From assembly GCA_965655095.1 (NCBI GenBank), contig OZ296652.1, positions 21,328,001-21,392,000 of the forward strand: DNA of 64,000 nucleotides, in the 5' to 3' direction. Under the pieces are notes generated by a model. The model made no database searches and was not told the origin of the DNA. It saw only the letters and a program-made list of their open reading frames with translations. Source of the DNA: Haplodiscus bocki (taxonomy: Eukaryota). Made by a program: the position numbers and the translations under genes. Below are positions 18,004-64,000 of this stretch, in pieces; the stretch's first letter is position 1, and every line of letters begins with the position of its first letter.

Positions 18004-18165
18004 GACACATTGTAAAATTTTTAATTTGAAATCCGATATGTTTGAATTTTTTCAATTCAAAATCTGACACGTTGTAAAATTTTCAATTCAAAATATGACG
18101 CATTGTAAAAACATTGATTCAAAATCTGAAGCTTTGTCCAACGTTTTCATCAAAATCTGATTTTT
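18004..18165 (+). repeat. 31-bp minisatellite, ~5 copies
   Basis: GACACATTGTAAAATTTTTAATTTGAAATCC / GATATGTTTGAATTTTTTCAATTCAAAATCT / GACACGTTGTAAAATTTTCAATTCAAAATAT / GACGCATTGTAAAAACATTGATTCAAAATCT / GAAGCTTTGTCCAACGTTTTCATCAAAATCT. Confidence 0.9.
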
Positions 18166-18261
18166 TAGCTCGTTTCTCAGGTTCTTACTGAACAATCACA
18201 TCTACTGTCATGGTGAGAACTATTTTCCTGCGCAGCGGAGAAAAGAAAAACAATGTCTGTC

Positions 18262-21200
18262 AAAGTCACCAAAATACTCGCTGCACGATTTTCCTCCTGT
18301 ATGTTGATCATTTAGGCAACTTTCAACCAAAATTGATACTCGTGAATCAATTTGAAAAACCTTTTACATCCTGATTGGTCATCTAAATGTCCGAATATGG
18401 TAAGAGTCTGTAATTCCAGTCCATAATTGTACAGAGAATTAATAGGTTGTTAGACTGCAATTCGCACAAATGATTTATGTTTGGAAAAAATTCAAGTGGA
18501 CAACAATGTTGAAAACTATGGCTGCTGTTTTGTCACCAGTAATTTTTTTAACCAGGTTGTCCACAACACTCGTTGTTCACTTCCACAGATGACAAGGAAA
18601 AACATCTACATTTACCGAAAAATTGCCTTGCATACCATACCTCGAAATACTGTTTCCTATCTGATTGCCGTTACCATGCACTACTTATTGGCATAAACGA
18701 TTGTTCCGCTTGATTTTATTTTCCCTCAACTTGGCACCCTTTCAGGAGATTCTGTTCGCTTTCAGTTTGTCTTTGCTTGAGAGGATAAAATTTTCGCACT
18801 TTGTTTTTTTCTCATAACCAGATGTGTGCTGTGAACGATGCATTTTTTCGAGAGTCCACTTATTCTCATGCGAAGAAGTCCTTTCGCTTAAGATCTTTCC
18901 ATATGAAGTATACGGTAACTAGTAACCCTTGCTACATTGTTTTGGCCCTTATTTGTTTTTTATTGCAACAGTCAAGTTGCTACGGTCTCTACGTTTACTT
19001 CCCATGACTTTCTCAAACCCTCTTCACTGAAACGTTTTTCCGGAATTAGAACAAACAATGTACTTCGGGAGACTATGCTATACAAAGGAAAATTAGAGTA
19101 AAAAACAGGACAATTGGGTCTTTTGGGCATTTGTGCAACGTTTAAACACTCAACTTCTCAACGAACTCCCAAAACGAATTCTCTCTACTTCTTCAGTTAT
19201 CTCAAACTACTGCTGAATTATGAGTGTGCGTTTTTCTTTGGCAACAATGGACATTATCGAACATTTAACTCCCGTCAGAAACTGGAACTTGTTTTCGTGC
19301 AAATTGGAGTCAAGTTTTGTCTGTCAAGCTCCATTTACCCTGACAACGTTTAAAACCAGTATTTTGACTCTGGACTCCACTACCTGGATTGGTGGGAGAA
19401 CAAATTCTGTTTTCTTAAAGTTCTTTTGGACACGTCCGTTTTTCAACCACATAGATTGTGTTTTACTAGGTTTGATCCGCATCAGTTTAATGAATGCCAT
19501 TCATTCTGAAAATCATTTTTTTTATTTTGAAGCAGACTGTTAATTTCAGAGACAAAGTCCGATGGCTTAGGTATTTTGTTCGTAGACATGTTTAGGTAAA
19601 GGTATAATATTCGTCGGCTGAGTTTTTCCGAATACCAGAAAAAAGAAAGACGAGTGTAGGTTCTCCGGAACTTGTCTATTGGCAATTTTCCCGGTTTTCG
19701 TTCAAACACGGAAGACATTTTCTTCCGGTCGAGGTTCAATTTTGTCGAACCAGTGCCATCGAAAAGTTTGCTGCACAGCTTTGTTGCTGTCTGTTGATAA
19801 TTTTTGAAAAAAAATATGCGTATTTGGTACTCGTGAATCATCTTGCAAAATCTTTTCCAACGTGATCGGTCATTAAAAGTTCCTTTTACGGAAAAAGTCC
19901 ACAGTTTCGGCCATCTTTGTACAGCGAAGTAATGAGCTATTTCGCTTTATATCACCCAATCCATTTTTGTTTGAAAACCATTCCAGTGGACAGCGCTGTT
20001 GAAAAAACCATTGCTGCTGATATATTACAAGCAAAATTTTTTTTAAAATCCCAGTTACTCACAAAGCTCGTTGTTCACTTCCACATATTACGATGGAAGA
20101 CATCTACATATTCAGCAGAATTGCCTTGCAAATCATACTTTGAATTACTGTTCATTATCTGATTGCCGTCAATATGCAGTACTTCTTAGAGAAAACGATT
20201 GTTCCCATCGATGATGTTCCTAAGACAGTTTGGCTTCACTTGATTTGATAAAGGGTGCGCAATTCGTTTTTTCTCCCATAACCAGATGTGTGCTGTGAAC
20301 ATTACAGTTTTTTCTCACGGATCACTTTTTCTCATGTGAAGCAGTCGTTTTTTATGTTCTTTCCTTTTTTTGTATAAAGTCGGGAGTAGATCTTGCTACA
20401 CATTTTTCGCCGTGATTTGTTTTTTTTGCTACAAGTCAAGTTGCTACGATCTCTACGTCTACTTCCCATGAATTTCTTAAACCTTGTTCGCTGGAAGTTT
20501 TTCCCTCATTTAGAACGAAGGGGTAAATTGAGAGATCTATGCTACAGTAAAGACAAAGACAAGTAGAAAGCACAATAATATACAGGACCAATGCTCAGTT
20601 GGGCCTTTGTCCAGCACCTAAAGTCTCAACTTTTGATTGAACTCCCAAGATTAACTCCCTCTACGTCTTTAGTTTTCTCACATTACTGTTGAATTATCGG
20701 TTTTCTTTTTTCTTTGACTACAAAGAATAATATTTGAACAATTAACTCCTCCTATAAGCTGAAAAATGTTCGGTGCAAGTCACCTTTTGTCCTCGTAAAG
20801 TTTGAAGCCTGTTTTGTGACTCTGGGCTCACCTGCTGGGTTGGTAAACACACTTAGTTTACTATTTTGAAAATCTTTGTTCATGTCTACTTTTTTAACTA
20901 TGTAGGTTGTGTATAATTATGTTTGTTATGAGAATGCCATTCGTTCTGAGAATCGAGTTTTTCTATTCCGCACGAGATTGTTAATTTCAGACATGAGTTC
21001 CGAAGGCATGGGTTTTTTTCCTTGTAGTCTTTATGGGTAAAAGTATATTATTAGTTGGCTGAGTTTTTCCGAACAAGAGAAAAACGGCAGACGATTATAC
21101 GTTTTCCGGAAATAATGCATTGGTAAATATCTCAGTCTTCGTCCACACAAGTAATTTTTTCCCGGTCAAAAATAGACTTCGTCAAACCAGAGTCACCGAT

Positions 21201-24200
21201 ATAGTCGCTGCACGATTTTCTTGCTGCATGATTTGTTTGGGAAATTTATCCGTGTTTGATACTCGCGAATCAACTTGCAAAACCTTTTACATCCTGATTG
21301 GTCATCAAATTTTCCGATTACGATAAAAAAACGGCAATTTTAGCCCATATTTGTACAGCGAGGTAAGAGGCTGTCCGGCTAAATTTCGCCTCAGTATTCT
21401 TTGTTTGAAAACCAATCGAGTACACAACGCTGCTAAAAAACCAAGACTGCTATTGCGTTACAAGCAAATTCTTTTTTTATTCAGTCTATCCACGAAGCTC
21501 GGTGTTCACTTTCACATATCACAAAGAAAAACAACTATATTTTCCGAAAAAATGCCCTGCAAACCATACTTCGAAATACTGTTCCCTATCCGATTGCCGT
21601 TACCATGCACCTTTGCTTGGGGGAAACGATTGTTTTACTTGATTTTCTTTCTCAGAAAGGTTGTCGCTCTTTTAGGAGATTTGATTCCCCTTGAATAGAT
21701 TTTTCAGACAATGTGTCTTCGGTTGGGATGGTAAAATTTCGTAAATTGTTTTTTCTCATAACCAAATGTGTACTGAGAACAAAGCAGTTTTTTCTGACAG
21801 TGCTTCTATTCTCCTGCGAAGAAGTCTTTTCTCTTAAGATTTTTCCATAGATGGTATAAAGTAAGGAGTAACTGTGGCTGCAAACCTTTTGCGCTTCTTT
21901 ATTTCCCAATCCCACAGTCAAGTTGCTAAATTCTTTACGTTTACTTCCCATGAGTTTTCGAAATACTATTCGCTGGAACGCATCCCCTTACTTAGAACAA
22001 ACAAGTTGTTTCAGAATACTATGCAATAGAAAAGACAAAGAAGAGTAGAATAATGTACATTACAAATGCTCCATTGATCTTTAGTACAACGCTAAAAGAC
22101 TCAACTTCTCAACTAACTCCCTAGATGAACACTCTCTACTTCTTTAACCATCGCGAATTACTGCTGAAATATGAGCGTGCACTTTTCTCGGACAACGAAT
22201 GGACACTATCGAACAAATACCTATTGTTCAAAGTCGGAACTTGTTTTCGTGCAAATGGAAGGCAAGTTGTGTCACTAAGGCACTTGTTGCTCGGATAAAC
22301 ATTAAAGGCTGAATTGTGACTCTGGACTCCAGTAGTTGGATCGTTAAAAACACATAACCTCGTATTTTGTTTTTCTTTTGTGCATGTCTATTATTTTAAA
22401 GATACAGGTTGCGTACTGTTGACCTTGTCCAGGCATCAGATGAAAGATTGCCAATCATTCTGAAAAACGATCTTCTTGATTTTGAAAGGGACTTTAAAAT
22501 TCCGAGACAATGTTGGATGGCTGAGGTTTTTTTTGTGGTCATATCTGAATAAAATTATAACATTTGTTGGCTGAGTGTTTCTGAATACCAGAATACCGAA
22601 AGACGACTATAGGTTTAACGGAAATTGTCTATTGGTAGATTTATCGGTTTTCGTCCAAACATGGAACAGATATTCTTCTGGTCAACGTTCGCTTTTTCCG
22701 AAGCAGTATCACCGATATCTTCGCTGCACAATTGTCTTGCTGTATTTTGATCATTTTTGGCAAATTTCTCCGTATATGGTACCTGTGAATCAACTTGGAA
22801 AATCTTTTGCGTCTTGATGGGTCATCCAAGTTCCCTATTTTAATAAAATCTGTAATTACAGCCCATATTTTTACAGCGAGGTACTAGGCTGCTTGGCTGT
22901 ACTGCGGGGCAGTCACTTTCGTTTGAAAACCTTTGGAAAAGGCAACGTTGTTGAAAAACTATGGCTGCTGCTGTTACAAGCAAATTCATTTTTTATCCAG
23001 GTTAATCACAAAGCTCGTTGTTCATTTCCGCATATCACAATGAAAAATGTCTACATGTTGTGAAGATTGCTTTGCAAACCCTATTTCCAAATACTGTTCC
23101 TTATCTGATTGCCGTAACCAAGCACTACTTCTTGGGGAAAGTGTTTGTTCCGCTTGATTTCTTTTTCCAGAAAGGTTGTCGCCTTTTCAGGAAACTACAA
23201 TCGCTTTGGAATTTTTTCTCAGACAGTATGTCTTCGCTTGCGATGATAAAAGGTTTGCAATTTGTTTGTTCTCAAAACCAGATGTGTGCTATGAACGATG
23301 CATTAATTTCTGAGAAGCCACTTCTTCTCATGTGAAGCAGTCCGTTCTTTTTAGTTCTTTCCGTATATGGTATAAAGTAAGGAGTAACTCTTGCTGAAAA
23401 ACTTTTGCCCTTTTTAATGTTACAATGCCGCAGTCATTTTGCTACAAACTCTACGTTTAATTCCCATTAAATTCCTTAACATTAGTCATTTTTAAACTTC
23501 CCGTAATTAGAAAGTTTGCTTTTTACTTCAGACGACTATATTATCTAAAAGACAAAGAATCTTGGAGTAATATAAATGATAAATGGTCAGTTGGGCAGTT
23601 GTACAGCGTTAAAACACTCAGTTCTCAACAAACTCCCAAAAAGAACTCCCTCTTCTTCTTCTTCAGTCATCTCAAATTACTGCTGGTTCACGAGCGTGCC
23701 TTCTTCTTTGACAACAAAGAGACTTTATCGAAAAGGTAATTGCTCTTAAAAGGTGGCACTTTTTGCCCCAGAATCATTAAAGCCTGTAGTGTGACTCTGG
23801 ACTCCAGTAGCTGGATCGGTAAAAGACAAAATCTACTAATTTAAAATCCTTTCGTGAATGTTTAATCTTTTAACCAAAGAGATTGTGTACTGCTATGTTT
23901 GTTCCGCTTAAGTTGAGAGAATGCCATTTGTTCTGAAAACAGTGTTTTCATTGTGAAAGCGATTGTTTTTTTCGGAGACAATGTTTGATAGCTGAAGTTT
24001 TTCGTTCGTAGTCGTGCTTGGGTGAAAGCATATTATTCTTAGGACCAGTTATTCCAAATACCAGAAGATGACTATAAATTTTCCGGAAATTGTGCATTGG
24101 TAAAAATTCTGGCTTTACGTGAAATAGTGAAGAGAGTTTTTTGTGGCCAGAGCTTGTTTTTTTTCGAACCAGGGTCACTTATATAACCGTTGCACGCCTC

Positions 24201-27200
24201 TCCTGCTGTTTGTTGATCATCGTTGTAAAATTTATCCGTATTCGGTACTCGTGAGTCAATTTGCAAAATTTCTCACACCCTGTTGGGTCATCAAAAGTTT
24301 CATTTGCAGCAAAAGTTTATAAATTCAGCCCAACTTTGTAGAGCGAGGCAAGAGACTGTTTGGCTGTATTTCGCCCAAGACATTTTTTTTGAGAACCATT
24401 CGAGTAAGCAACGCTGCTAAAAAATCATGGCTGCTCCTATGTTGCGAGCAAAGTCATTTTTTATCAAAGCTAATCAAAGAACATGTCATTCATTTCAAGA
24501 TATCTCAATGGAAAACATCTACAAATTGAGAACAAAGGCCCTGTAAACCATGCCTCGAATTACTGTTTCTTATCTGTTTGCCAATACCATGCACTACATT
24601 TTGGGATAAACGATTGATCCGCTTGATTTTTTTGTCGGTCAACTTGTCGCCCTTTTGAAGCGCTTGTTCCCATCGATGATGTTTCGACAGTTTGTCTTCG
24701 CTTGAAAAGATAAAAGGTGCGCAATTTTTTTTTCTCATAACCAGATATGTGCTGTGAACATTGCAGTTTTTTCTCACAGATCACTTATTCTCATATGAAG
24801 CAGTCGTTTCTGTTATGGTCTTTCCTTTTATTGTATGAAGTAAGGAGCAAACCTTGCTACAAATTTCTCGACTTCCTTTTTTTTACACTGCCACAGTCAA
24901 GTTGCTTCGAACTCTACGTTTACTGCCCATGGATTTTATGAGCACTTTTTACAGGAACCGTCTCCCTTAAAACGAACGTACAAGTTAATTGTGAGGACCA
25001 TGCTATACAAAAGACAAAGGAAAGTAGAGTAATAAACAAGAGAATTGCTCAGTTGGCCCTTTGTATGGCGCCCAAAGACTCAACATCTCAACGAACTCCG
25101 AAGATGAACTCTCTCGACTTCTTTAGTCATCTCATTTTACTGCTGAATTATTAGTGTGCCCTTTTCCTTTGACCAGAGTTGGACATTATCAAAGAATTAA
25201 CTCGTCTTGAAAGCTGGAACTTGTTTTCGTGCAAATTGAAATCAAGATGTGTCTGTCAGGCTCAGGCACTTTTAGCCTCGGTACACTTTAAAACCTGTAT
25301 TGTGACCATAGACTCGACTAACTGGAACGATGAAAACACATTTTTTTTTATTTTAAAATTCTTTTGTGCATGTCTTTTAACCATATAGATTGTATATTGC
25401 CAGGTTTATTCCGGATCAGTTGAAAGAGTGCCATTTCTTCTCAGAGTCAGTTTTTTGATTTGGAAATTAACTGCTTTGTCATTGACAATGACCGATGGCT
25501 TCACGTTTTTCGTTCGAAGTCGTATTTGGGTGAAAGCATAATATTCGTTGCATCATTGTTTCTGAAGATCAGAATAATGAAACACGAGTAAAAGTTTTCC
25601 GGAAATTGTGCATTGGTAAAAATGTCGGTTTTCGACCGAACACGGAAGAGATTTTCTTCTGGTCAAAGCTCGTTCTTTTTTCAAACTAGAGTTATCTATA
25701 TAGTCGCTGCACAATTTTCCTGTTGTATGTTGATCATATTTGGAAAATTTATCCGTATTTGGTAGTCGTGAGTCATTTTGCAAAATCTTGCACACCCTGA
25801 TGAGTCATTGAAAGTTCCATTTACGACAAAAAATTCTATCTTCAGTCCAAATTTTTACAGCAAGGTAATAGATTGTTTGCCTGTAATTACACCATATCAT
25901 TTTGGTGGAGAACCATTGCAGCAGACAACGCTGTTGAAAAAACCAGGGCTGCTGCTTTGTTACAAGGAAATTCCTTTTCTATCCAAATTGCTCACAGAGC
26001 TCCTTGTTCACGTCCACAAAAACAAAAGAAAATGCAACTATATTTTGAGAAAAATTGCCCTGCAAACCATACTTCGAATTATTGTTCTTTGTTTTTTCAG
26101 GGTTACCATGTACCACTTCTTGGATAAAATGATTTTTCCACTTGATTTTTTTCTCAGACATTGTCGTCCTATCAGGAGAATTTGTTCCCCTTGATGAATT
26201 TTCTGCGACGGTATGTCTTTGTTTGAGATCATAAGGATTCGCTTTTTGTTTTTTCTTCTCATAACCCGATGTTTACTGTGATTAGTGAGGTTTTTTCTGA
26301 GAGTCCTCTTATCCTCATGTGAAGCAGTCTTTTGTTTAAGGTCCTTCCATATACGGTAAAAACAAAGTAGTAACCCTTGCTAAAAATTTTTCGCCCTTTT
26401 TGTATGAGAACCACAGTCAAGTTGCTACGATCCCTACATTTACTTCCCATGAATTTCCTAGACTTTGTTCAGTGAAACGTTTTTCCTTAATTAGATGGAA
26501 CATGTTAATTCGGAGGACTATGCTATACAAATTAAAAAGAAGAGTTGAGTAATACACAGGACAAATGCTCTGTTAGGCCTCTGTACAGCGCTAAAAACTC
26601 AACCTCTCAACGAACTCACAAGTTGAACTCCCTCTACTTCTTTAGTCATCTCAACTTACCGCTGAAAGATTAGTGTGCATTTTTTTGACAACAAATGGAC
26701 AATATTGAACAATTAACTCCTCTTAAAAACTGGAAACTGCTTTCGTGCAAATTGAAGTCATCTTCCCTCAGCAACCTTTTGCCCTGGTAAACATGAAAAC
26801 CTGCAATTTGACTCTGGACTCCACTAGTTGGATTAGTAAAAACAAATAAAACACTATTGTAAAAGTTTTCCGTGCATGTCTAATCTTTTAGCCATAAAGG
26901 TTGTGTATTCTTGGGTTTATCAAGGCATCAGATGAAAGAAAGCCATTCATTCTGAAAATCGATTTTTTTTTATTTTGAAGTAGATTGTTAATTTCAGAGT
27001 CAATGTCCGTTGGCTTCCGTTTTTTGTTCGTAGTCGTACTTGGGTAAAAGCATAATATTCCTCGGCTAAGCGTTTCCGAATACCAGAATAACGGAAGATG
27101 ACTATAAGTTTTCCGGAAGTTGTGCATTGTTAAAAATGTCGGTCATAGTCCAAAAACAGAAGAGGTTTTCTTTTGGTCATAGTTCGTTTTTGTTGGACCA

Positions 27201-30200
27201 GAGTCACCTATATAGCCGCTGCACATTTTCCATGCTGTATGTTGATCTTTTGCGAAATTCTGTCCCTCCTTGGTACTCGTGGATCAACTTGCAAAATCTT
27301 TCAAATCCTAATTGGCCATCAAACGTTTCTTTTACGATAAAAGTGTATAAATTCAGACCTAACTTGTGCAGCGGGTTAATAGACTGGTTGGCTGTAATTT
27401 GCCGAGGTCATTTTGGTTTTTCAAAATTCGAGCAGACAACGCTGTTTAGAAAATCATGGTTTCTGCTGTGTTGCAAGCAAAGTCCGTTTTTTTATCCAGG
27501 TTCATTAGAGAACTTGTTGTTCACTTCCGCATATCACAAAGAAAAACACTTATATAGTGGAAAAATTGCTTTGCGAGCGCTACTTCGAATCACAGTTCCT
27601 TATCTGATTGCCGAAACCAAGCACTACTTCATGGGGAAAACGATTGTTCCACTTGATTTCATTTTCAAGTCAAGTTGTCGCCCTCTGAGGAAATTTTGTT
27701 CCCTATTGAATATTTTCTCAGTCAGTATGTCTTCGATTGAGTTGACAAAATGTTGGCAATTTGTTTTTTTTCTCATAACAAGATGTGTGCTGGGAACGAT
27801 GCATTGTTTTCTGAGAAGCCACTTCTTCTCATGTGAAGGAGTCCTTTCTTTATAGTTCTCTCCGTATATGTTATAAAGTGAGGAGTAACTCTTGCTGAAA
27901 AACTTTTGCTTTTTTTTATGTTAAAAGGCCACAGTCATTTTGCTACGACCTCTACGTTTAATTTCCATTAACTTTCTTAACGTTAGTCATTTTTCATCCT
28001 CCCGTAATTAGAAGTTTTTTTTCACATCAGATGACGATATTATACAAAAGACAAAAAATCGTGGAGTATTATAAAAGACAAATGGTCAGTTTCCAGTTGT
28101 ACAGCGTTAGAAGACTCAGTTCTCAACGAACTCTCAAAATGAACTCCCTCTTCTTATTCAATCATCTCAAATTACTGCTGATTTTTGAGCGTGCACCCTT
28201 CTTTGACAACAAAGTGACTTTATCAAAGAAGTAACTCCTCCTAAAAGGTGGAATTTGTTTTCGTGCAAGTTGAAGTCAAGTTGTGTGCCTCAGGCACTTT
28301 TTTGCCCGAAAAACTTTAAAGCCCGTAGTGTGACTCTGGACTCCAGTAGCTGGATCGGTAAAACGGAAAATCTCCTTTTTTAAAATCCTTTCGTGAATGT
28401 TTAATATTTTAATCAAGTAGATTGTGTATTGCTACGTTTGATCCGCATAATTATAAAGAATGCCATTTGCTCTGAAAATCAGTCTTTTCATTGTGACAGC
28501 GACTGTTTTTTCCAGAGACAAAGTTTGATGGCTGAAATTTTTCGTTCGTAGTCGTGCTTGTGTTAAAGCATATTATTCACAGGGTCAGTGATTCCAAATA
28601 CCAGAAGACGACTATAAGTTTTCCGGAATTTTTCCATGGGTAAAAATTTTGGTTTTGGACGAAACAGTGAAGAGAATGTTTTCTGTTCAAGGGGTCGTTT
28701 TTGTCGAACCAGGGTCACTTATATAGTCGTTGCACGCTTTTCCCGCTGTATGTTGATCATCTTTTAATTTTATCCGTATTCGGTTTTCGTGAGTCAATTT
28801 GCAAGATTACTTACATCCTGTTTGGTTATCAAAAGATCCATCTCCAGCAAAAAATTGTAACTTCAGCCCAATTTCGTACAGCGAGTTAAGATACTGTTTG
28901 GTTGTACTTCGCCCAAGACATTTTTTTGAGAACCGTTCGAGTAAGCAACGCTGTTAAAAAAACCATGGCTGCTCCTATGTTGCGAGAAAAGTCCTTTTTT
29001 ATCCAGGTTATTCAGAGTACTTGTCGTTCACTTCAAGATATCTCAATGGAAAACATCTACAAATTGAGAACGAAGGCCCCTTAAACCATGCCTCGAATTA
29101 CTATTTCTTTTCTGCTTGCTGTTACCATGCACTACTTTTTGGAATAAACGATTGTTCCGCTTGATTTTATTTTCCCTCAACTTGGCACCCTTTCAGGAGA
29201 TTCTGTTCGCTTTCAGTTTGTCTTTGCTTGAGAGGATAAAATTTTCGCACTTTGTTTTTTTCTCATAACCAGATGTGTGCTGTGAACGATGCATTTTTTC
29301 GAGAGTCCACTTATTCTCATGCGAAGAAGTCCTTTCGCTTAAGATCTTTCCATATGAAGTATACGGTAACTAGTAACCCTTGCTACATTGTTTTGGCCCT
29401 TATTTGTTTTTTATTGCAACAGTCAAGTTGCTACGGTCTCTACGTTTACTTCCCATGACTTTCTCAAACCCTCTTCACTGAAACGTTTTTCCGGAATTAG
29501 AACAAACAATGTACTTCGGGAGACTATGCTATACAAAGGAAAATTAGAGTAAAAAACAGGACAATTGGGTCTTTTGGGCATTTGTGCAACGTTTAAACAC
29601 TCAACTTCTCAACGAACTCCCAAAACGAATTCTCTCTACTTCTTCAGTTATCTCAAACTACTGCTGAATTAAGAGTGTGCGTTTTTCTTTGGCAACAAAT
29701 GGACACTATCGAACATTTAACTCCCCTCAGAAACTGGAACTTATTTTCGTGCAAATTGGAGTCAAGTTTTGTCTGTCAAGCTCCATTTACCCTGACAACG
29801 TTTAAAACCAGTATTTTGACTCTGGACTCCACTACCTGGATTGGTGGGAGAACAAATTCTGTTTTCTTAAAGTTCTTTTGGACACGTCCGTTTTTCAACC
29901 ACATAGATTGTGTTTTACTAGGTTTGATCCGCATCAGTTTAATGAATGCCATTCATTCTGAAAATCATTTTTTTTATTTTGAAGCAGACTGTTAATTTCA
30001 GAGACAAAGTCCGATGGCTTAGGTATTTTGTTCGTAGACATGTTTAGGTAAAGGTATAATATTCGTCGGCTGAGTTTTTCCGAATACCAGAAAAAAGAAA
30101 GACGAGTGTAGGTTCTCCGGAACTTGTCTATTGGCAATTTTCCCGGTTTTCGTTCAAACACGGAAGACATTTTCTTCCGGTCGAGGTTCAATTTTGTCGA

Positions 30201-32050
30201 ACCAGTGCCATCGAAAAGTTTGCTGCACAGTTTTGTTGCTGTCTGTTGATAATTTTTGAAAAAAAATATGCGTATTTGGTACTCGTGAATCATCTTGCAA
30301 AATCTTTTCCAACGTGATCGGTCATTAAAAGTAATGAGCTATTTCGCTTTATATCACCCGATCCATTTTTGTTTGAAAACCATTCCAGTGGACAGCGCTG
30401 TTGAAAAAACCATTGCTGCTGATATGTTACAAGCAAAATTTTTTTAAAATCCCAGTTACTCACAAAGCTCGTTGTTCACTTCCACATATTACGATGGAAG
30501 ACATCTACATATTCAGCAGAATTGTCTTGCAAATCATACTTTGAATTACTGTTCATTATCTGATTGCCGTCACTTTGCAGTACTTCTTAGGGAAAACGAT
30601 TGTTCCGCTTGATTTCGTTTCTGAGACTGCTTTTTGCCCTTTTAGGAGAATTTGTTGCTCTGGATGATTTCTCCCAGACAGTAAGTCTTTGCTTGAGATG
30701 ATTAAACTTTCGCACTTTGTTTTGTTCCCCAAATCAGATTGTTATTATGAACAATGCAGTTTTTTCGACAGTAGTTTTTTTCTGGCGTGAAGCAGTTGTT
30801 TCTTTTAAAGGTTTTCCATATACTGTATAAAATAAAGAGTAACGCTGGTTTGGAAACTTTTGCTTTCAGTTATTTAGCAATGCCACACTCAAGTTGCTAC
30901 GATCTCTACGTTTACTTCCCATCACTTTCCTATACACTGTTCATTGGAACATTTTCTCGTATTTAGAACGAACCAGTTAATTCGGTGGACTATGCTATAA
31001 AAAGACAAAGAAGAGTAGAATAATATCAAGGACAAATGCACTGTTGGGCATTTGTACAGCACTAAAAGGCTCAACTTCTCAAAGAACTCACCGGGTGAGC
31101 TGTCTCTACTTCTTTAGCTATCTCAAATCACTGCTGAATTAAAAGTGTACACGTTTCTTTGACGGCAGATGGACATTATCGAACAATTAACTCCTCTTAG
31201 AAACCGGAACTTGTTATCGTGCAAATTGAAGTCCAGTTGTGTCTGTCAAATACCTTTTGCCCTGAAAAAGTTTTACAAACCAGTATTGTGACTCTGGACT
31301 CCACTACCTGGATTGGTGTAAAAACAAATTCTGTTTTCTCTAGAATTCTAGAATTCCTTTGTGCGTGTCTAATTTTCAAGCAGATAGATTGTGTTTTGGT
31401 AGGATTGATCCCCATCACTTAAAACAATGCTATCCATTCAGGAAGTCAGTTTTTTTGTTTCTAAAAAGAGTTTGTCATTTTCAAAGGCAATGTATGAGGG
31501 CTTAGGTATTTTAGTCGTAGTCATTTTTGGCTAAAAGTATAGTGATAATTGGCTCAAAGTTTCCAAATACCAAAATAACCGGAGACCACAGTAGGTTTTC
31601 TGGAATTTGTGTATTGGTAAAAATCTCGCTTCTCGTCCTGCTGTATATTGAGCATTTTTCGAGTTTTTATCCGTGTTTGGGACTCGTGAATCAATTTGCA
31701 AAACCTTTTACATCCAGACTGGTATGAAAAGCTCCTTTTGCGGTAAAATTCTATAACTGTAGCCCGTATTTGTACAGCGAGTTAAGAGATTGTTCGGCCG
31801 TAATTCGCGAAAGTCATTTTTGTTCGAGAACCATTCGAGTAGACAACGCTGTTGGGAAAACCATGGCTGCGGCTATGTTACGAGCAAAAACTTTTCTAAT
31901 TGCAGGATTTCTACAAAGCTTGTTGTTCATTTCTCCGTATCACAACGAGAAACATCTACAAATTCAGAAGAATTGGATTGCAAATCATACTTGGAATTAA
32001 TGTTCCGAATCTGATTGCCGTCACTATGCACAACTTCTTGGGGAAAATGA
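18262..32050 (+). repeat. Diverged edge layer of the array (~9 monomers)
   Basis: Neighbouring monomers differ by many substitutions and deletions; the period varies from ~1400 to ~1540 bp. Confidence 0.9.
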
Positions 32051-55000: not shown

Positions 55001-58000
55001 GGTCGCTCTTTTAGGAGAACTTGTTCCCCTGGTTGATTTTTGTCAGACAGCATGTCTTCCCTCGAGATTTTAGAAGTTTCGCAACTTGCTTTTTTCTCAA
55101 AACCAAATGTAAAGTGTGAACAATGCAGTTTTTTCTGACAGTCTTCTTATTCTCGTGTGAACCAGTCCTTTCTTTCAAGGTCCTTCCATATACGGTAAAA
55201 AGGAAGTAGTAAACCTTGCTTAAAATTTTTCGCCCTTTTATTGTATCTGAGAACCACAGTCAAGTTGCTAACATCTCTACTTTTACTTCCCATGAACTTA
55301 GTAAACAACGTTCACTGGAACGCTTTCCCTTACTTAGAACGAACAAGTCAATCCAGATGAATATGCTTTACAAAAGAGAAGGAAGAGTTAAGTCATATAC
55401 ATGACATATGCCCAGTTGGGCCTTTCTACAGCACTAAATGACTAGACTTCTCTACGATCTCTCAAGATCAACTCTCTCTGATTCTTTGGTCATCTCAAAA
55501 TACTGCTGAAACATGAGTGTGCGTTTTTCTTTGATAGCAATGAGACCTTATCCAACAGTTGACTCCTCCTAAAAACGGAAATTGTTTTCGTGCCAGTTGA
55601 AGTCAAGGTTGTGACTCAGGCACTTTTTGCCCTGGTATATGTAACAGCCTGTATTGTCAGTCGAGACACCATCAGGTGCATCGGTAACAACACATGACCT
55701 AATATTTCAAATTAATCCGTGAATGTCTAATATTTTAACCATATAAGTTGTTCATTGCTATGTTTGTTCCGCATCAGTTAAGATAATGCTCTTTTTTCGG
55801 AAAATCTTTTTTTTTGTTTTCGAAGGAGACTTTTAAATTCAGAGACAATGTCTGATTGCTTAAGTTTTTTGTTCTTAGTCATAAAACGGAAAAAGTATGT
55901 AATTCGTTGGCTGAGTGTTTCCGAATACCAGATTAACCAAAGACGAATATAAATACGTCTTCCGGAATTGTTTTTTTGATAAAATTCTTGGTTTTCGTCC
56001 AGACATGGAACATATTTCCTTCTGGCCAAGGTTCGATTTTGTGGAACCAGTGTCACCGATATATTTGCTGCACCGTTTTATTGCTGTATGTTTATAATTT
56101 TTGTAAAGTATATCCGTATTTGGTGCTCGTGAATCAGCTTGCAAACTTTTTTGCAGCTTGATTGGTCACCAAAGTTCCATTTACGGAAAAAGTCTACAGT
56201 TTCGGGCCATACTTGTACAGCGAAGTAATGGCCTGTTTGGCTTTATCTCACCCAATTCATTTTTGTTTGAAATCCGTTCCAGTAGACAACGCTGTTGAAA
56301 AAAAACCATTGCCACTGATATGTTACAAGCAGAATCATTTTTTTAAATCCAAGTTAGTCACAAAGTTCGTTGTTCACTTCCACATATCACAATGAAAATT
56401 ATCTACTTATTCAGCAGAATTGCCTTGCAAATCATACTTGGAATTATTGTTCCTTATCCGATTGCCGTCACTATGCACAACTTTTTGGGGAAAAGGATTG
56501 CTCCGCTTGATTCCATTCCTCAGACAGCTCGTCGCTCTTTTAGGAGAACTTGTTCCCCTGGATGATTTTTGTCAAACAGCATGTCTTCCCTCGAGATTTT
56601 AGAAGTTTCGCAACTTCCTTTTTTCTCAAAACCAAATGTAGATTGTGAAGAATGCAGTTTTTTCTGACAGTCCTCTCATTCTCGTGTGAAGCAGTCCTTT
56701 CTTTTAAGGTCCTTCCATATACGGCAGAAAGAAAATAGTAACCCTTGCTACAAATTTTTCGCCCTTATTTGTTTTTGGTTACCACAGTCAAGTTGCTAAG
56801 ATCTCTACGTTTACTTCCCATGAATTTACTGAACACCGTTCACAGTAACGCTTTCCCTTACTTAGAACGCACAAGTCAATCCAGAGGACTATGCTACCAA
56901 AAGACAAGGAAGAGTAAAGGAATACACATGAAACATGCCCAGTTGGGCCTTTCTACAGCACTACAAGACTCAACTTCTCTACGAACTCCAAGATCACCTC
57001 TCTTTGATACTTTAGTCATCTCAAATTACTGCTGAAACAAGAGTGTGCACTTTTCTTTGATAATAAAGAGACCTTAGCCTACAGTTGACTCCTCCTAAAA
57101 ACAGAACTTGTTTTCGTGCCAGTTGAAGTCAAGTTTGTGACTCAGGCACTTTTTACCCTGGCAAATGTTACAACCTGTATTGTGAGTCTAGACACCATTA
57201 GGTGGATCGGTAACAACACATGACCTAATGTTTCAAATAATCTGTGCATGTCTAATTATTTTACCATATAGGTTGTTTTTTGCTAGGTTTGATCCGGATC
57301 AGTTGAGATAATGCTCTCTTCTGAAAATCATTTTTTTTTTGAAGGAGACTTTTAAATTCAGAGACAATGTCTGATTGCTTAGGTTTTTTGTTCGTAGTCA
57401 TAAATTGGAAAAAGTATGTAATTCGCTGGCTGAGTGTTTCTGAATACAGGATTAACGAAAGGCGACTATATATACGTCTTCCGGAAATTCCGGAAAATGT
57501 TTTTTTTTGGTAAAACTCTTGGTTTTCGTCCAGACATGGAACAGATTTTCTTCAGGTCATGGTTCAATTTTGTCAAACCAGTGTCACCGATATAATTGCT
57601 GCACAGTTTTCTTGCTGTGTGTTGATAAATTTTGTAAAATGTATCCGTATTTGGTGCTCTTGAATCAACTTGCAATTTCTTTTGCAACTTGATTGGTTAT
57701 CAAAAGTTCTATTTACGGAAAAATTCTACAATTTCAGGGAATAATTGTACTGCGAAGTAATGGCCTGTTTGGCTTTATTTCACCGAATTCATTTTTGTTT
57801 TGAAACCATTCCAGTAGACAACACTGTTTAAAAAAACATTGCTGCTTGTATGTTATAAGCAAAATCATTTTTTCAAATCCAAATTAGTCACAAAAATCGT
57901 TCTTCACTTCCACATATCATAATAAAAAACATCTACATGTTAGCAGAAATGCCTTGCAACCCTTACTTGGAAATATTGTTCTTTATCTGATTGCCGTCAT

Positions 58001-61000
58001 TATGCACTACTTCTTGGAGAAAAGGATTGCTCTACTTGATTTCATTTCTCAGACATCTTGTCGCCCCTTTAGGGAGAACTTGTAGCCCTGGATTATTTTC
58101 TCAGACAGCATGTCTTCCCTCAAAATTTTAGAAGTTGCGCAACTTGCTTTTTTCTCAAAACCAAATGTAAATTGTGAACAATGCAGTTTCTTCTGACAGT
58201 CCTCTTTTTCTTGTGTGAAGCAGTCTTTTCTTTTAAGGTCCTTGCATATCCGGCAGAAAGAAATTAGTATCCCTTGCTACATTTTTTTCGCCCTTATTTG
58301 TTTTTGATTACCACAATCAAAATGCTACGATCTCTACGTTTACTTCCCATGAATTTACTAAACACCGTTCACTGGAACGCCTTCCCTGACTTAGAACGAA
58401 CAAGTCAATCCAGAGGACTACGCTATACAGAAGAGAAGGAAGATTTAGGTAATATACATGACATACACCCAGTTGGGCGTTTCTACAGCACTAAATGACT
58501 CAACTTCTCCACGAGCTCCCAAGATCAACTGTCTCTGATTCTTTAGTCATCTCAAATTACTGCTGAAACATGAGTGTGCACTTTTCTTTGACAGCAAAGA
58601 GACCTTATCCAACAGTTGACTCCTCCTAAAAACGGAACTTGTTTTTGTGCCAGTTGAAGTCAATTTGTGTCACTCAGGCACTTTTCATTCTGGCAAACTT
58701 TACAGCCTGTATTGTGAGTCTGGACACCATTAGGTGGATAGGTAACAACACAGGACCTAATATTTCAAAATAATCTGTCCATGTCTAATATTTCAAACAT
58801 ATAGGTTGTTTATTGCTAGGTTGGATCCGCATCAGTTAGGATAATGCTCTCTTCTAAAAAACGTTTTTTTTTTGTTTTCGATGGAGACTTTTATATTCAG
58901 AGACAATGTCTGATTGCTTAAGTTTTTTGTTCGTAGTCATAAAAAGGAAAAAGTATGTAATTCGTTGGCTGAGTGTTTGCGAACACCAGATTAACCAAAG
59001 GCGAATTGAAATACGTCTTGCGGAAAATTTTTTCTGATGAAATTCTCGGCTTCCGTCCAGACATGCAACAGCTTGTCTTCTGGCCAAGGTTCGATTTTGT
59101 GGAACCAGTGTCACCGATATATTTGCTGCACCGTTTTATTGCTGTATGTTTATAATTTTTGTAAAGTATATCCGTATTTGGTGCTCGTGAATCAATTTGC
59201 AAATTTTTTTTGCAACTTGATTGGTCATCAAAAGTTCCATTTGCGGAAAAAGTCTACAGTTTCGGGCCATACTTGTAAAGCGAAGTAATGGCTTGTTTGG
59301 CTTTATCTCACCCAATTCATTTTTGTTTGAAATCCGTTCCAGTAGACAACGTTGTTGAAAAAACCATTGCTACTGATATGTTACAAGCAAAATCATTTGA
59401 TTTAATCCAAGTTAGTCACAAAGTTCGTTGTTCACTTCCACATATCACAATGGAAAACATCTACTTATTCAGCAGAATTGCCTTGCAAATCATACTTGGA
59501 AATATTGTTCCTTATGTGATTGCCGTCACTATGCACAACTTCTTGTGGAAAAGGATTGCTCCACTTGATTCCATCTCTCAGACAGCTTTTCGCTCTTTTA
59601 GGAGAACTTGTTCCCCTGGATGATTTTTGTCGGACAGCATGTCTTCCCTCGAGATTTTAGAAGTTTCGCAACTTGCTTTTTTCTCAAAACCAAGTATGTA
59701 TTGTGAACAATGCAGTTTCTTCTGACAGTCCTGTTATTCTTGTGTGAAGTCTTTTCTTTTAAGGACCTTCCATATACGGCAGAAAAAAATTATTAACCTT
59801 GCCACAATTTTTTCGCCCTTCTTTGTTTTTGAATATCACAGTCAAGTCGCTAAGATCTCTACATTTACTTCCCATGAACTTAGTAAACAACGTTCACTGG
59901 AACGCTTTCCCTTACTTAGAACGAACAAGTCAATCCAGATGAATATGCTTTACAAAAGAGAAGGAAGAGTTAAGTCATATACATGACATATGCCCAGTTG
60001 GGCCTTTCTACAGCACTAAATGACTAGACTTCTCTACGATCTCTCAAGATCAACTCTCTCTGATTCTTTGGTCATCTCAAATTACTGCTGAAACATGAGT
60101 GTGCGTTTTTCTTTGATAGCAATGAGACCTTATTCAACAGTTGACTCCTCCTAAAAACGGAAATTGTTTTCGTGCCAGTTGAAGTCAAGGTTGTGTCACT
60201 CAGGCACTTTTTATTCTGGCAAACTTCACAGCTTGTATTGTGAGTCTGGACACCATTAGGTGGATAGGTAACAACACAGGACCTGATATTTCAAAATAAT
60301 CTGTGCATGTCTAATATTTTAAACATATAGCTTGTTTACTGCTTGGTTTGATCCGCATCAGTTAGGATAATGCTCTCTTCTGAAAAACGTTTTTTTTTTT
60401 GTTTTCGAAGGAGACTTTTATATTCAGAGACAATGTCTGATTGCTTAAGTTTTTTGTTCGTAGTCATAAAAAGGAAAAAGTATGTAATTCGTTGGCTGAG
60501 TGTTTGCGAACACCAGATTAACCAAAGGCGAATTGAAATACGTCTTGCGGAAAATGTTTTCTGAAGAAATTCTCGGCTTTCGTCCAGACATGCAACAGCT
60601 TGTCTTCTGGCCAAGGTTCGATTTTGTGGAACCAGTGTCACCGATATATTTGCTGCACCGTTTTATTGCTGTATGTTTATAATTTTTGTAAAGTATATCC
60701 GTATTTGGTGCTCGTGAATCAATTTGCAAATTTTTTTTGCAACTTGATTGGTCATCAAAAGTTCCATTTACGGAAAAAGTCTACAGTTTCGGGCCATACT
60801 TGTACAGCGAAGTAATGGCCTGTTTGGCTTTATCTCACCCAATTCATTTTTGTTTGAAATCCGTTCCAGTAGACAACGCTGTTGAAAAAACCATTGCTAC
60901 TGATATGTTACAAGGAAAATCATTTGATTTAATCCAAGTTAGTCACAAAGTTCGCTGTTCACTTCCACATATCACAATGAAAAACATCTACTTAGTCGGC

Positions 61001-64000
61001 AGAATTGCCTTGCAAATCATTCTTGGAATTATTGTTCCTTATCCGATTGCCGTCACTATGCACAACTTCTTGGGGAAAAGGATTGCTCCGCTTGATTCCA
61101 TTCCTCAGACAGCTGGTCGCTCTTTTAGGAGAACTTGTTCCCCTGGATGATTTTTGTCAGACAGCATGTCTTCCCTCGAGATTTTAGAAGTTTCGCAACT
61201 TGCTTTTTTCTCAAAACCAAATGTAAAGTGTGAACAATGCAGTTTTTTCTGACAGTCTTCTTATTCTCGTGTGAACCAGTCCTTTCTTTCAAGGTCCTTC
61301 CATATACGGTAAAAAGGAAGTAGTAAACCTTGCTTAAAATTTTTCGCCCTTTTATTGTATCTGAGAACCACAGTCAAGTTGCTAACATCTCTACTTTTAC
61401 TTCCCATGAACTTAGTAAACAACGTTCACTGGAACGCTTTCCCTTACTTAGAACGAACAAGTCAATCCAGATGAATATGCTTTACAAAAGAGAAGGAAGA
61501 GTTAAGTCATATACATGACATATGCCCAGTTGGGCCTTTCTACAGCACTAAATGACTAGACTTCTCTACGATCTCTCAAGATCAACTCTCTCTGATTCTT
61601 TGGTCATCTCAAAATACTGCTGAAACATGAGTGTGCGTTTTTCTTTGATAGCAATGAGACCTTATCCAACAGTTGACTCCTCCTAAAAACGGAAATTGTT
61701 TTCGTGCCAGTTGAAGTCAAGGTTGTGACTCAGGCACTTTTTGCCCTGGTATATGTAACAGCCTGTATTGTCAGTCGAGACACCATCAGGTGCATCGGTA
61801 ACAACACATGACCTAATATTTCAAATTAATCCGTGAATGTCTAATATTTTAACCATATAAGTTGTTCATTGCTATGTTTGTTCCGCATCAGTTAAGATAA
61901 TGCTCTTTTTTCGGAAAATCTTTTTTTTTGTTTTCGAAGGAGACTTTTAAATTCAGAGACAATGTCTGATTGCTTAAGTTTTTTGTTCTTAGTCATAAAA
62001 CGGAAAAAGTATGTAATTCGTTGGCTGAGTGTTTCCGAATACCAGATTAACCAAAGACGAATATAAATACGTCTTCCGGAATTGTTTTTTTGATAAAATT
62101 CTTGGTTTTCGTCCAGACATGGAACATATTTCCTTCTGGCCAAGGTTCGATTTTGTCGAACCAGTGTCACCGATATATTTGCTGCACCGTTTTCTTGCTG
62201 TATGTTGATAAATTTTGTAAAATATATCCGTATTTGGTGCTCGTGAATCAGCTTGCAAACTTTTTTGCAGCTTGATTGGTCACCAAAGTTCCATTTACGG
62301 AAAAAGTCTAAAGTTTCAGGCCAGAAATGTACAGCAAAGAAAAGGCCTGTTTGGCCTTATTTCAGCCAAATCATTTTTGTCTGAAATCCGTTCCAGTAGA
62401 CAACGCTGTTGAAAAAAAACCATTGCCACTGATATGTTACAAGCAGAATCATTTTTTTAAATCCAAGTTAGTCACAAATTTCGTTGTTCACTTCCACATA
62501 TCACAATAAAAATTATCTACTTATTCAGCAGAATTGCCTTGCAAATCATACTTGGAATTATTGTTCCTTATCCGATTGCCGTCACTATGCACAACTTTTT
62601 GGGGAAAAGGATTGCTCCGCTTGATTCCATTCCTCAGACAGCTCGTCGCTCTTTTAGGAGAACTTGTTCCCCTGGATGATTTTTGTCAGACAGCATGTCT
62701 TCCCTCGAGATTTTAGAAGTTTCGCAACTTCCTTTTTTCTCAAAACCAAATGTAGATTGTGAAGAATGCAGTTTTTTCTGACAGTCCTCTCATTCTCGTG
62801 TGAAGCAGTCCTTTCTTTTAAGGTCCTTCCATATACGGCAGAAAGAAAATAGTAACCCTTGCTACAAATTTTTCGCCCTTATTTGTTTTTGGTTACCACA
62901 GTCAAGTTGCTAAGATCTCTACGTTTACTTCCCATGAATTTACTGAACACCGTTCACAGTAACGCTTTCCCTTACTTAGAACGCACAAGTCAATCCAGAG
63001 GACTATGCTACCAAAAGACAAGGAAGAGTAAAGGAATACACATGAAACATGCCCAGTTGGGCCTTTCTACAGCACTACAAGACTCAACTTCTCTACGAAC
63101 TCCAAGATCACCTCTCTTTGATACTTTAGTCATCTCAAATTACTGCTGAAACAAGAGTGTGCACTTTTCTTTGATAACAAAGAGACCTTAGCCTACAGTT
63201 GACTCCTCCTAAAAACAGAACTTGTTTTCGTGCCAGTTGAAGTCAAGTTTGTGACTCAGGCACTTTTTACCCTGGCAAATGTTACAACCTGTATTGTGAG
63301 TCTAGACACCATTAGGTGGATCGGTAACAACACATGACCTAATGTTTCAAATAATCTGTGCATGTCTAATTATTTTACCATATAGGTTGTTTTTTGCTAG
63401 GTTTGATCCGGATCAGTTGAGATAATGCTCTCTTCTGAAAATCATTTTTTTTTTGAAGGAGACTTGTAAATTCAGAGACAATGTCTGATTGCTTAGGTTT
63501 TTTGTTCGTAGTCATAAATTGGAAAAAGTATGTAATTCGCTGGCTGAGTGTTTCTGAATACAGGATTAACGAAAGGCGACTATATATACGTCTTCCGGAA
63601 ATTCCGGAAAATGTTTTTTTTTGGTTAAAACTCTTGGTTTTCGTCCAGACATGGAACAGATTTTCTTCAGGTCATGGTTCAATTTTGTCAAACCAGTGTC
63701 ACCGATTTAATTGCTGCACAGTTTTCTTGCTGTGTGTTGATAAATTTTGTAAAATGTATCCGTATTTGGTGCTCTTGAATCAACTTGCAATTTCTTTTGC
63801 AACTTGATTGGTTATCAAAAGTTCTATTTACGGAAAAATTCCACAATTTCAGGGAATAATTGTACTGCGAAGTAATGGCCTGTTTGGCTTTATTTCACCG
63901 AATTCATTTTTGTTTTGAAACCATTCCAGTAGACAACACTGTTTAAAAAAACATTGCTGCTTGTATGTTATAAGCAAAATCATTTTTTCAAATCCAAATT
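46040..64000 (+). repeat. Homogeneous domain 2 with higher-order repeats, order E-D-E-D-E-F-G-D-E'-F-G-D
   Basis: Dimer offset 3055-3060 (46603/49658/52718; 48292/51351). Tetramer offset 6114 (52160/58274, 54331/60445, 54623/60737, 55216/61330, 55778/61892, 56745/62859). Confidence 0.9.

What the first reader, a model, noticed from the sequence alone, without database searches (positions are those of the whole stretch)
18262..64000. Layered 1.53-kb macrosatellite with higher-order repeats: candidate centromere or pericentromere edge
Seen: TE debris, then diverged monomers, then homogeneous HOR domains. Established: primate alpha-satellite arrays have diverged monomeric flanks around homogenised HOR cores, but with ~171-bp monomers. 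Inference: this is an uncharacterised array with the same layered architecture and a monomer about nine times larger. It may be centromeric chromatin, or another long-unit locus such as a piRNA source or heterochromatin block.
Basis: partly seen in the sequence, partly recalled or inferred. Interest (0 to 1): 0.8.

Follow-up and report, generated by a model that had tools for sequence, protein, structure and literature searches.

The report
Short single-locus 1.53-kb layered satellite
This is a real, non-coding tandem array of about 41-45 copies of a 1.53-kb unit with old, diverged copies at both ends and young, re-copied blocks in the middle, but it is only about 62-69 kb long and was found at one place only, so it looks like an ordinary locus-specific macrosatellite and not a centromere.

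Summary
From 18,261 to the window end there are 30 full copies of a 1,401-1,533-bp unit. Nine edge copies are 68-77% alike. A 9-copy domain then shows a 5-unit pattern, and a 12-copy domain is built from a dimer that became a 6.11-kb tetramer (copies 98.3% alike). A second public contig, read as the other haplotype, shows the array ending about 17 kb beyond the window with the same step-down (99% > 84-94% > 82% > 72%). Layering is therefore two-sided, and the whole array is only about 62-69 kb.

The unit has no ~170-bp sub-period, no coding signal, no Pfam, Rfam or protein relatives, and no CENP-B-like box. Protein-level searches found it only on the two allelic contigs, while a flank repeat used as a control hit more than 5,000 proteins. 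The haplotypes differ by whole-unit insertions and deletions, and there are 1-1.5-kb tracts of near-identity inside old copies.

This fits unequal exchange and gene conversion with the well-known weaker homogenisation at array ends, which is not specific to centromeres. I put the centromere reading at about 5%.

One unusual feature, seen only on the other haplotype, is that inverted copies of the left-flank 2.84-kb repeat bracket the array.

Earlier scan notes describe similar layered satellites elsewhere in this genome. This sequence was noted only on this same stretch.

The parts
1593..2186 (+). Fragment of a high-copy dispersed repeat in the far flank. This is the only confirmed 'TE debris'.
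   Evidence: The 103-aa stop-free piece at 1,593-1,901 has 5,046 protein relatives at E<=0.001; the 120 best listed are 79-96% identical and lie on contigs of many different lengths. No Pfam family.
6081..6732 (+). Strongly decayed relic of the 2.84-kb flank unit, including its copy of the shared module.
   Evidence: nhmmer with the unit profile and with the monomer profile, E 3e-4 to 8e-8.
11330..17003 (+). Two tandem copies (U1 11,330-14,166; U2 14,167-17,003) of a 2.84-kb unit, about 70% alike.
   Evidence: BLAST self-comparison: 70.3% over 2,635 bp. Profile search.
11989..12658 (-). Copy of the ~690-bp module shared with the satellite (unit positions 372-1061), antisense to the array, inside U1.
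   Evidence: nhmmer E 7.9e-132. Sharp homology boundaries in alignment A1. The module is bounded at U positions 665-1355 in all 30 monomers.
14712..15496 (-). Second antisense copy of the shared module, inside U2.
   Evidence: nhmmer E 6.2e-120.
11751..14208 (.). Left arm of a near-identical inverted repeat. Its partner lies to the right of the array on the other-haplotype contig.
   Evidence: L005 14,280-16,736 is 99.8-99.9% identical to the reverse complement of this stretch. Seen on contig ctg82929 only. That contig is seen to end at this boundary; the start of ctg87553 at window ~11,741 is inferred from coordinates.
18010..18160 (+). Short ~37-bp minisatellite 100 bp left of the array. Its words are extremely abundant in public runs.
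   Evidence: Sequence read. Summed contig depth is about 222,000 against a single-copy depth of about 44 in run X1, with many 37-61-bp 'goes back' joints.
18261..18330 (+). Left end of the array: a partial unit (unit positions ~1457-1516).
   Evidence: nhmmer. In runs X1-X3 a single-copy-depth contig at 18,071/18,077-18,677 bridges this edge; in X4 the listed pieces stop at 18,074 and resume at 18,280.
18331..31674 (+). Left edge layer: nine old monomers m01-m09, 68-77% alike, each a deep lineage.
   Evidence: Identity matrix. Tree branch lengths are 0.09-0.19, apart from the m01/m08 twins on a 0.15 stem. The m02/m03 contig is at single-copy depth.
18680..20130 (+). ~1.45-kb tract 99-100% identical to 29,130-30,580, inside otherwise ~67%-alike monomers (m01/m02 versus m08/m09). 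Read as a recent conversion or duplication tract.
   Evidence: Sliding identity. Contig depth is about 2-3 times single copy.
31675..45419 (+). Core domain 2: m10-m18 in the five-unit pattern A A B C D | A A B.
   Evidence: Matrix. m11-13 versus m16-18 are 98.4% alike over 4,576 bp.
45420..63763 (+). Core domain 3: m19-m30, E/F dimers (3.06 kb) followed by the tetramer E-G-H-F (6.11 kb) twice.
   Evidence: Matrix. The tetramer copies are 98.3% alike, in a patchwork of 100% and 90% windows. Window 37,057-57,392 is reproduced at 100% by an independently named ENA contig.
63764..64000 (+). Start of monomer m31; the array runs off the window.
   Evidence: By homology with the other haplotype, about 11 more units follow and the array should end near window-equivalent 80,800.

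Best explanation
This is a locus-specific, non-coding macrosatellite: about 41-45 head-to-tail copies of a 1.53-kb unit, 62-69 kb in all. It evolves by in-register unequal exchange and gene conversion.

An old array diverged to about 70% identity. One monomer lineage was later re-amplified in the interior to give the 21+ core copies. Multi-unit duplications (2, 4 and 5 units) then produced the local higher-order repeats. Copies at both ends take part in exchange less often, so they keep the old divergence; this is the edge effect.

Shown here: the layering on both sides, the single origin of the core, whole-unit copy-number differences between haplotypes, and near-identity tracts inside old copies. 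Inferred: that the array has no sequence-specific function and is not the centromere.
For: Tandem structure and layers.

Core monophyly (100/100) with star-like old copies, rooted on the flank module copies.

Right-hand step-down on the other haplotype (99-100% > 84-94% > 82% > 72%), and the end of the array there.

Whole-unit differences between haplotypes, while orthologous units are 99.4-100% alike (the flank is 99.83%): a 4,453-bp three-unit duplication in the old zone, plus shifts of one unit (1,523 bp and about 1,460 bp).

Mosaic identity tracts: m01/m08; h2 27,501-28,500.

No sub-period. No period-3 signal and no open frame. No Pfam or Rfam match.

Exhaustive HMMER and the word search find only gene calls on this same locus. 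The same kind of search finds more than 5,000 copies of a flank repeat.

Flat conservation along the unit (best 25-bp block 0.95 against a mean of 0.79, SD 0.09).

The edge effect is described as general for satellite arrays in PMC5615363, section 3.4.3.1.
Against: No chromatin, methylation or RNA data exist for this locus, so a function cannot be excluded.

'Single locus' rests on ORF-level searches of the public protein collections, where only one ENA assembly yielded hits (likely built from the same reads as the window), and on single-copy contig depth for edge units only. A direct DNA scan of the whole genome was not possible.

The right end was seen only on the other haplotype.

Small, chromosome-specific centromeric repeats do exist in other organisms, so size alone does not exclude a centromere.

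The inverted-repeat bracketing is not predicted by this simple model.
Confidence: 0.78

Rival explanations
1. The array is the centromere, or the edge of the centromere, of this chromosome: a chromosome-specific long-unit centromeric satellite with CenH3 sitting on the young HOR core.
For: Two-sided age layering with a young HOR core resembles primate alpha-satellite organisation. Coral centromere DNA is essentially unknown, and one chromosome-specific centromeric FISH marker has been reported in a scleractinian (PMC12355185).
Against: The array is only about 62-69 kb, with 2-3 copies of each HOR. It was detected at a single locus. There is no nucleosome-length sub-period, no CENP-B-like box and no composition difference from the flanks. 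Layering is generic for arrays. Earlier scan notes, which I did not check, report many comparable kb-unit arrays in this genome and ~170-180-bp HOR satellites on several pieces, one of them about 36 Mb further along this same piece. Those are more conventional centromere candidates.
Confidence: 0.05
2. The locus is, or derives from, one large foldback-type structure: inverted arms made of 2.84-kb units bracket a central satellite that shares a 690-bp module with the arms. It arose either as a foldback-like mobile element or by breakage and amplification at the centre of an inverted duplication.
For: On contig ctg82929 the DNA right of the array is an inverted copy of the left flank: 2.5 kb at 88% directly abutting the last monomer, then 2.46 kb at 99.8-99.9%. 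The arms are themselves tandem units, and they share a sharply bounded module with the satellite unit. ctg82929 is seen to end at the outer boundary of the near-identical arm, and the coordinate mapping puts the start of ctg87553 at the same point, window ~11,741; an assembler typically breaks contigs at a near-identical inverted repeat. Foldback elements that seed satellites are known (Tetris, PMC4079207). An unchecked scan note reports a foldback element carrying a 1.58-kb macrosatellite on another piece.
Against: It was seen on one haplotype contig only, and the 99.9% arm lies at the contig end, where mis-joins occur. No terminal inverted-repeat ends, target-site duplication or transposase were seen. 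No second copy of the unit or arms was found elsewhere. The central array is in a single orientation. This reading concerns the origin of the locus and does not conflict with the turnover model.
Confidence: 0.15
3. The repeat is an assembly artefact: a collapsed, expanded or chimeric repeat.
For: Long near-identical repeats are hard to assemble, and the window runs off inside the array.
Against: A differently named public contig reproduces window 17,136-37,855 and 37,057-57,392 at 100%. A second contig carries the allelic array, with orthologous units 99.4-100% alike. Short-word contigs at single-copy depth bridge the left edge in runs X1-X3 and cover edge units in all four runs.
Confidence: 0.02

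Closest known systems
Locus-specific macrosatellites with kilobase units (the class that includes human D4Z4 and DXZ4; named from my own knowledge)
   Same: The unit is longer than 1 kb, the array spans tens of kb at one locus, and copy number differs between haplotypes by whole units.
   Different: There is no ORF, CpG-rich island or known protein-binding element in the unit. No sequence similarity to any described family was found. GC content is about 37%, the same as the flanks.
Primate alpha-satellite centromeric arrays (HOR core flanked by diverged monomeric layers)
   Same: Higher-order repeats, a young homogenised interior and progressively older copies towards both edges.
   Different: The unit is 1.53 kb with no ~170-bp sub-period. 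The array is about 65 kb, not megabases. It is at a single locus. There is no CENP-B-type box. CenH3 is untested.
Long-unit, chromosome-specific centromeric satellites of potato and chicken (recalled from my own knowledge, not checked here)
   Same: A kilobase-scale unit that is unique to one chromosome.
   Different: Those arrays are far larger and were defined by CenH3 ChIP. Here there are no chromatin data, the array is short, and no retrotransposon homology was detected.
Satellites seeded by foldback elements (Tetris/TIR-220 in Drosophila virilis, PMC4079207)
   Same: Inverted arms that themselves contain tandem units, and a satellite that shares sequence with the arms.
   Different: In Tetris the ~220-bp repeats lie inside the TIRs of a multi-copy element. 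Here the units are 1.5-2.8 kb, the structure is single-copy, no TIR termini or TSD were seen, and the right arm was observed on one haplotype contig only.

Membership tests
Alpha-satellite-like centromeric satellite | Tandem monomers organised in higher-order repeats | tested here: met
   Two-, four- and five-unit HOR patterns with copies 98-100% alike.
Alpha-satellite-like centromeric satellite | Nucleosome-length (~170 bp) monomer or sub-period | tested here: not met
   Ungapped autocorrelation, sensitive self-BLAST and sliced-profile nhmmer show no ~170-bp periodicity. They show only a ~45-bp local duplication and weak scattered matches.
Alpha-satellite-like centromeric satellite | Age-layered flanks around a homogenised core | tested here: met
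   Left side. Right side on the other haplotype. This feature is not specific to centromeres.
Alpha-satellite-like centromeric satellite | Very long array and/or the same family at the centromeres of many chromosomes | tested here: not met
   About 62-69 kb in total. Protein-level searches of the public collections find it on the two allelic contigs only, while a control repeat gives more than 5,000 hits.
Alpha-satellite-like centromeric satellite | CenH3/CENP-A nucleosome occupancy | not testable with these tools
   No chromatin data are available. The four public runs that hold the sequence are not on record as RNA or ChIP.
Alpha-satellite-like centromeric satellite | CENP-B-box-type motif (accessory, not universal) | tested here: not met
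   Two matches at up to 1 mismatch against 4.6 expected by chance, and neither is periodic.
Locus-specific macrosatellite | Unit of at least ~1 kb repeated head to tail over tens of kb | tested here: met
   Units of 1,401-1,533 bp; 30 full copies in the window and about 41-45 in all.
Locus-specific macrosatellite | Confined to one or a few loci | tested here: met
   as control. Edge units are at single-copy contig depth. Caveat: no whole-genome DNA scan was possible.
Locus-specific macrosatellite | Copy-number polymorphism by whole units | tested here: met
   The haplotype contigs differ by a 4,453-bp (three-unit) duplication and several one-unit shifts.
Foldback-element-derived satellite | Long inverted arms flanking the array | tested here: inconclusive
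   Present on contig ctg82929 (88% and 99.9% arms). The right flank of the window's own haplotype could not be fetched.
Foldback-element-derived satellite | Defined termini with a target-site duplication, and multiple copies in the genome | tested here: not met
   No TIR or poly-A termini at the module or unit ends. No other locus was detected. The outer right boundary lies beyond the contig end, so a TSD could not be examined.
TE- or gene-fragment-derived satellite | Detectable homology of the unit to a TE or host protein | tested here: not met
   Pfam gives nothing above noise. Exhaustive HMMER returns only self hits. No period-3 signal and no stop-poor frame. The depth spike inside the module sits on a T-rich low-complexity run.

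The most novel reading that the evidence does not exclude
The array may sit at the centre of a large inverted duplication: arms made of 2.84-kb units, one arm pair 99.9% alike across about 70-80 kb, and a central satellite that shares a 690-bp module with the arms. If so, it would be a giant foldback-type structure. It could seed macrosatellites in this genome, or it could flip the array by recombination between the arms. This might be one example of a wider class, given the unchecked note of a foldback element carrying a 1.58-kb macrosatellite on another chromosome.
Probability: 0.15. Interest if true: 0.5.

Novelty: new member of a known kind. Interest (0 to 1): 0.25.

Why it matters
The unit sequence matches nothing described, so it is a new satellite family, but its kind and its dynamics are textbook.

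Its value is as a clean, fully bounded example. With both haplotypes in hand, one can see the edge effect on both sides, the birth of higher-order repeats from a dimer to a tetramer, whole-unit copy-number changes even in the 'dead' edge zone, and conversion tracts.

It also warns against reading layered HOR architecture as a centromere signature in genomes that hold many kilobase-unit arrays.

If the inverted-repeat bracketing is real on both haplotypes, it would point to a way such arrays arise or rearrange.

Tried and rejected
1. Hidden ~170-bp monomer (1,530/9), prompted by earlier notes on other satellites of this genome. Autocorrelation, self-BLAST and sliced profiles were all negative.

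2. Ancestral gene or TE ORF in the unit. One + frame stays open in several diverged copies, including a 261-aa run at 27,070-27,852. However, stop mapping shows 0.8-1.6 stops per 50 codons in the best frame, there is no period-3 signal, there is no Pfam match, and HMMER finds only this locus.

3. The shared module as a dispersed TE. The contig-depth spike lies on a T-rich low-complexity run, so I dropped the claim.

4. Rfam: nothing. TRF: blind, because its period limit is 500 bp.

5. Protein atlas search on the flank peptide: uninformative.

6. Walking to the right end on the window's own contig (ctg87553). Four exact-ORF look-ups found nothing on record or only the other contig, so the right flank of that haplotype is unseen.

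7. Placing the window on its chromosome from scan notes.

8. Independent check of the organism. All related proteins are unnamed ENA calls and the run names are coded, so 'coral' rests on earlier unchecked notes only.

9. Gene coordinates of the 'reversed' ENA loci translate with stops. I suspect a different genetic code in that gene caller, and I did not rely on those gene models.


Full report
**Observation**

A k-mer distance histogram shows a dominant period of 1,524-1,533 bp from about 18.3 kb to the window end, with secondary peaks at 3.06 and 6.11 kb. TRF returned nothing because its period limit is 500 bp.

BLAST of one unit finds 30 full head-to-tail copies (m01-m30, 18,331-63,763), a partial copy at 18,261-18,330 and a 237-bp start of m31. 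It also finds two partial copies on the opposite strand in the flank.

The pairwise matrix shows three layers:
- m01-m09 are 68-77% alike, with the exceptions m01/m08 at 92% and m04/m07 at 82%.
- m10-m18 follow the pattern A A B C D | A A B, with A copies 98-99% and B copies 98% alike.
- m19-m30 are built from E/F dimers (the two types are about 87% alike) that became a tetramer E-G-H-F, present twice in the window. The two tetramers are 98.3% alike over 6,110 bp, in a patchwork of 100% and ~90% windows.

The higher-order units are present in only 2-3 copies each.

**What the unit is**

It is non-coding as far as I can tell:
- No Rfam family and no long ORFs.
- No period-3 signal in column variability.
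- No frame that is free of stops across diverged copies. The best frame still has 0.8-1.6 stops per 50 codons.
- No Pfam match above noise.
- Nearly flat conservation along the unit.
- An exhaustive HMMER search with the longest stop-free piece (261 aa, 27,070-27,852) against 1.84 billion proteins gave six hits, and all of them are gene calls on this same satellite.
- The word-based search with the recurrent 111-aa ORF gave one cluster, on the same two contigs.

Earlier scan notes said that several kilobase 'units' in this genome are hidden 8-10-mers of ~170-bp monomers, so I tested that idea here. Ungapped autocorrelation, sensitive self-BLAST and sliced-profile nhmmer show no such period. 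The 1.53-kb unit is a genuinely long unit.

**Surroundings**

The left flank holds two tandem copies of a 2.84-kb unit (11,330-17,003, about 70% alike) and an older relic at about 6.1-6.7 kb. Each carries, on the opposite strand, a ~690-bp module that equals unit positions 372-1061 of the satellite. The module's boundaries are sharp in all 30 monomers.

The module has no TIR, LTR or poly-A ends. A contig-depth spike inside it sits on a T-rich low-complexity run, so I do not claim a TE origin.

A ~37-bp minisatellite lies 100 bp left of the array, and its words are hugely abundant in public runs.

One far-flank piece (1,593-1,901) belongs to a dispersed repeat with more than 5,000 protein relatives; the 120 listed lie on contigs of many different lengths. 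This partly confirms 'TE debris'. It also shows that the protein-level approach does detect multi-locus repeats among ENA gene calls.

**Other copies of the locus**

A public ENA assembly (ERZ26859043) has two contigs for this place.
- ctg87553 (284 kb) is 100% identical to window 17,136-37,855 and 37,057-57,392, so it is the window's own haplotype.
- ctg82929 (123 kb) is 99.83% identical in the unique flank and carries the allelic array.

Stitching three overlapping loci of ctg82929 shows 24 further units and the right end of the array. The order is three copies of the tetramer HOR (99.5-99.9% to window units m20-m30), then a domain at 84-94%, then one unit at about 82%, then a last unit at about 72%. 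The layering is therefore two-sided.

The array spans about 68.5 kb (about 45 units) on that haplotype. On the window's haplotype I predict about 62.5 kb (about 41 units), ending near window-equivalent 80,800.

**Mechanism**

A tree of the module region, rooted on the flank copies, puts all 30 monomers in one clade. The nine edge copies are deep star-like lineages, and the 21 core copies form a single young clade (100/100, stem 0.09). The interior was therefore re-amplified from one lineage of an already old array.

Between haplotypes, orthologous units are 99.4-100% alike, but the unit count differs:
- The other haplotype has a 4,453-bp tandem duplication of three old-zone units. Its junction lies in the m01/m08 near-identical tract.
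- There are also several one-unit shifts.

Tracts of 99-100% identity, 1-1.5 kb long, sit inside otherwise 67-88%-alike copies.

These are direct signs of in-register unequal exchange and gene conversion. Weaker homogenisation at array ends is described as a general property of satellite arrays (PMC5615363). I therefore read the layering as the ordinary edge effect.

**Centromere question**

Points against:
- The chromosome extends at least 67.5 Mb beyond the window.
- There is no nucleosome-length period, no CENP-B-type box and no composition contrast with the flanks.
- Unchecked scan notes report many similar kilobase-unit arrays in this genome. They also report ~170-180-bp HOR satellites on several pieces, including one about 36 Mb along this same piece.

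Points for: only the architecture, plus the fact that coral centromere DNA is essentially unknown.

CenH3 occupancy cannot be tested here. I put the centromere reading at about 5%.

**The unusual feature**

On ctg82929 the DNA to the right of the array is an inverted copy of the left flank. 2.5 kb at 88% identity directly abuts the last unit, starting inside the module, which here has the same orientation as the array. This is followed by 2.46 kb that is 99.8-99.9% identical to the reverse complement of window 11,751-14,208, and there the contig ends. By the coordinate mapping, the window's own contig would begin at the same sequence point, which I did not see directly.

The 88% arm cannot be a trivial artefact. 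The 99.9% arm could be real (recent conversion between arms) or a contig-end mis-join.

I could not fetch the right flank of the window's own haplotype.

The closest precedent I found for satellites associated with inverted arms is the foldback element Tetris (PMC4079207). The defining TE features (termini, TSD, multiple copies) were not met here.

**Limits**

- The organism could not be verified. 'Coral' comes from earlier unchecked notes.
- The public runs are kept as contigs only, from one study and two samples, so depth is only a rough guide.
- No N stretches occur in the window.

**Verdict**

The interpretation as a centromere is not supported. This is a new member of a known kind, a locus-specific macrosatellite, with an inverted-repeat context that deserves one simple follow-up check.

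Noticed in passing
window 18,010-18,160: A ~37-bp minisatellite (…TTCAATTCAAAATCTGACACGTTGTAAAA…) lies 100 bp left of the array. In public contigs its words sum to a depth of about 222,000 against a single-copy depth of about 44, with many 37-61-bp 'goes back' joints. It is therefore a very abundant tandem family genome-wide.
   Followed up: partly
window 1,593-2,186 (+): A stop-free peptide (MATRNKRKLAALNKENCEEHPRSN…) has more than 5,000 relatives at E<=0.001; the 120 listed are 79-96% identical, unnamed ENA gene calls on contigs of many different lengths. There is no Pfam domain. It is a high-copy dispersed element of unknown class.
   Followed up: partly
window 7,223-8,062 (+): A 280-aa stop-free stretch, improbable by chance at this base composition. 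It has no Pfam match, and its only relative among 5.8 billion proteins is its own allele. It may be a decayed orphan gene or TE ORF.
   Followed up: partly
L005 11,741-16,736 (contig ctg82929, right of the array) versus window 9,699-14,208: The right flank of the array on the other haplotype is an inverted copy of the left flank (88% over 2.5 kb, then 99.8-99.9% over 2.46 kb up to the contig end). The adjacent left-flank units U1 and U2 are only 70% alike, so the far-apart inverted pair is much younger than the neighbouring direct pair.
   Followed up: partly
L008 ~4,500-13,500 (contig ctg82929) versus window ~26,600-30,600: The other haplotype carries a 4,453-bp tandem duplication of three 'old' edge monomers. 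Both copies are at least 99% identical to the single copy in the window, and the junction lies in the m01/m08 near-identical tract. The diverged edge zone is therefore still subject to unequal exchange.
   Followed up: yes
window 17,300-17,700: Public contigs pile up here to about 60-120 times single-copy depth, with many variant letters (for example 17,311-17,343 and 17,538-17,581). This suggests another dispersed repeat fragment in the 1.26-kb spacer between the 2.84-kb units and the array.
   Followed up: no
loci L001, L002, L004, L005 (contig ctg82929): The recorded gene products on this contig do not translate exactly from the DNA with table 11: there are 1-2 mismatches, one listed gene has 6 stops, and there are far more and longer 'genes' than on the allelic contig. 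The likely cause is that the source's gene caller used a code that reads through a stop codon. These are not real genes.
   Followed up: partly
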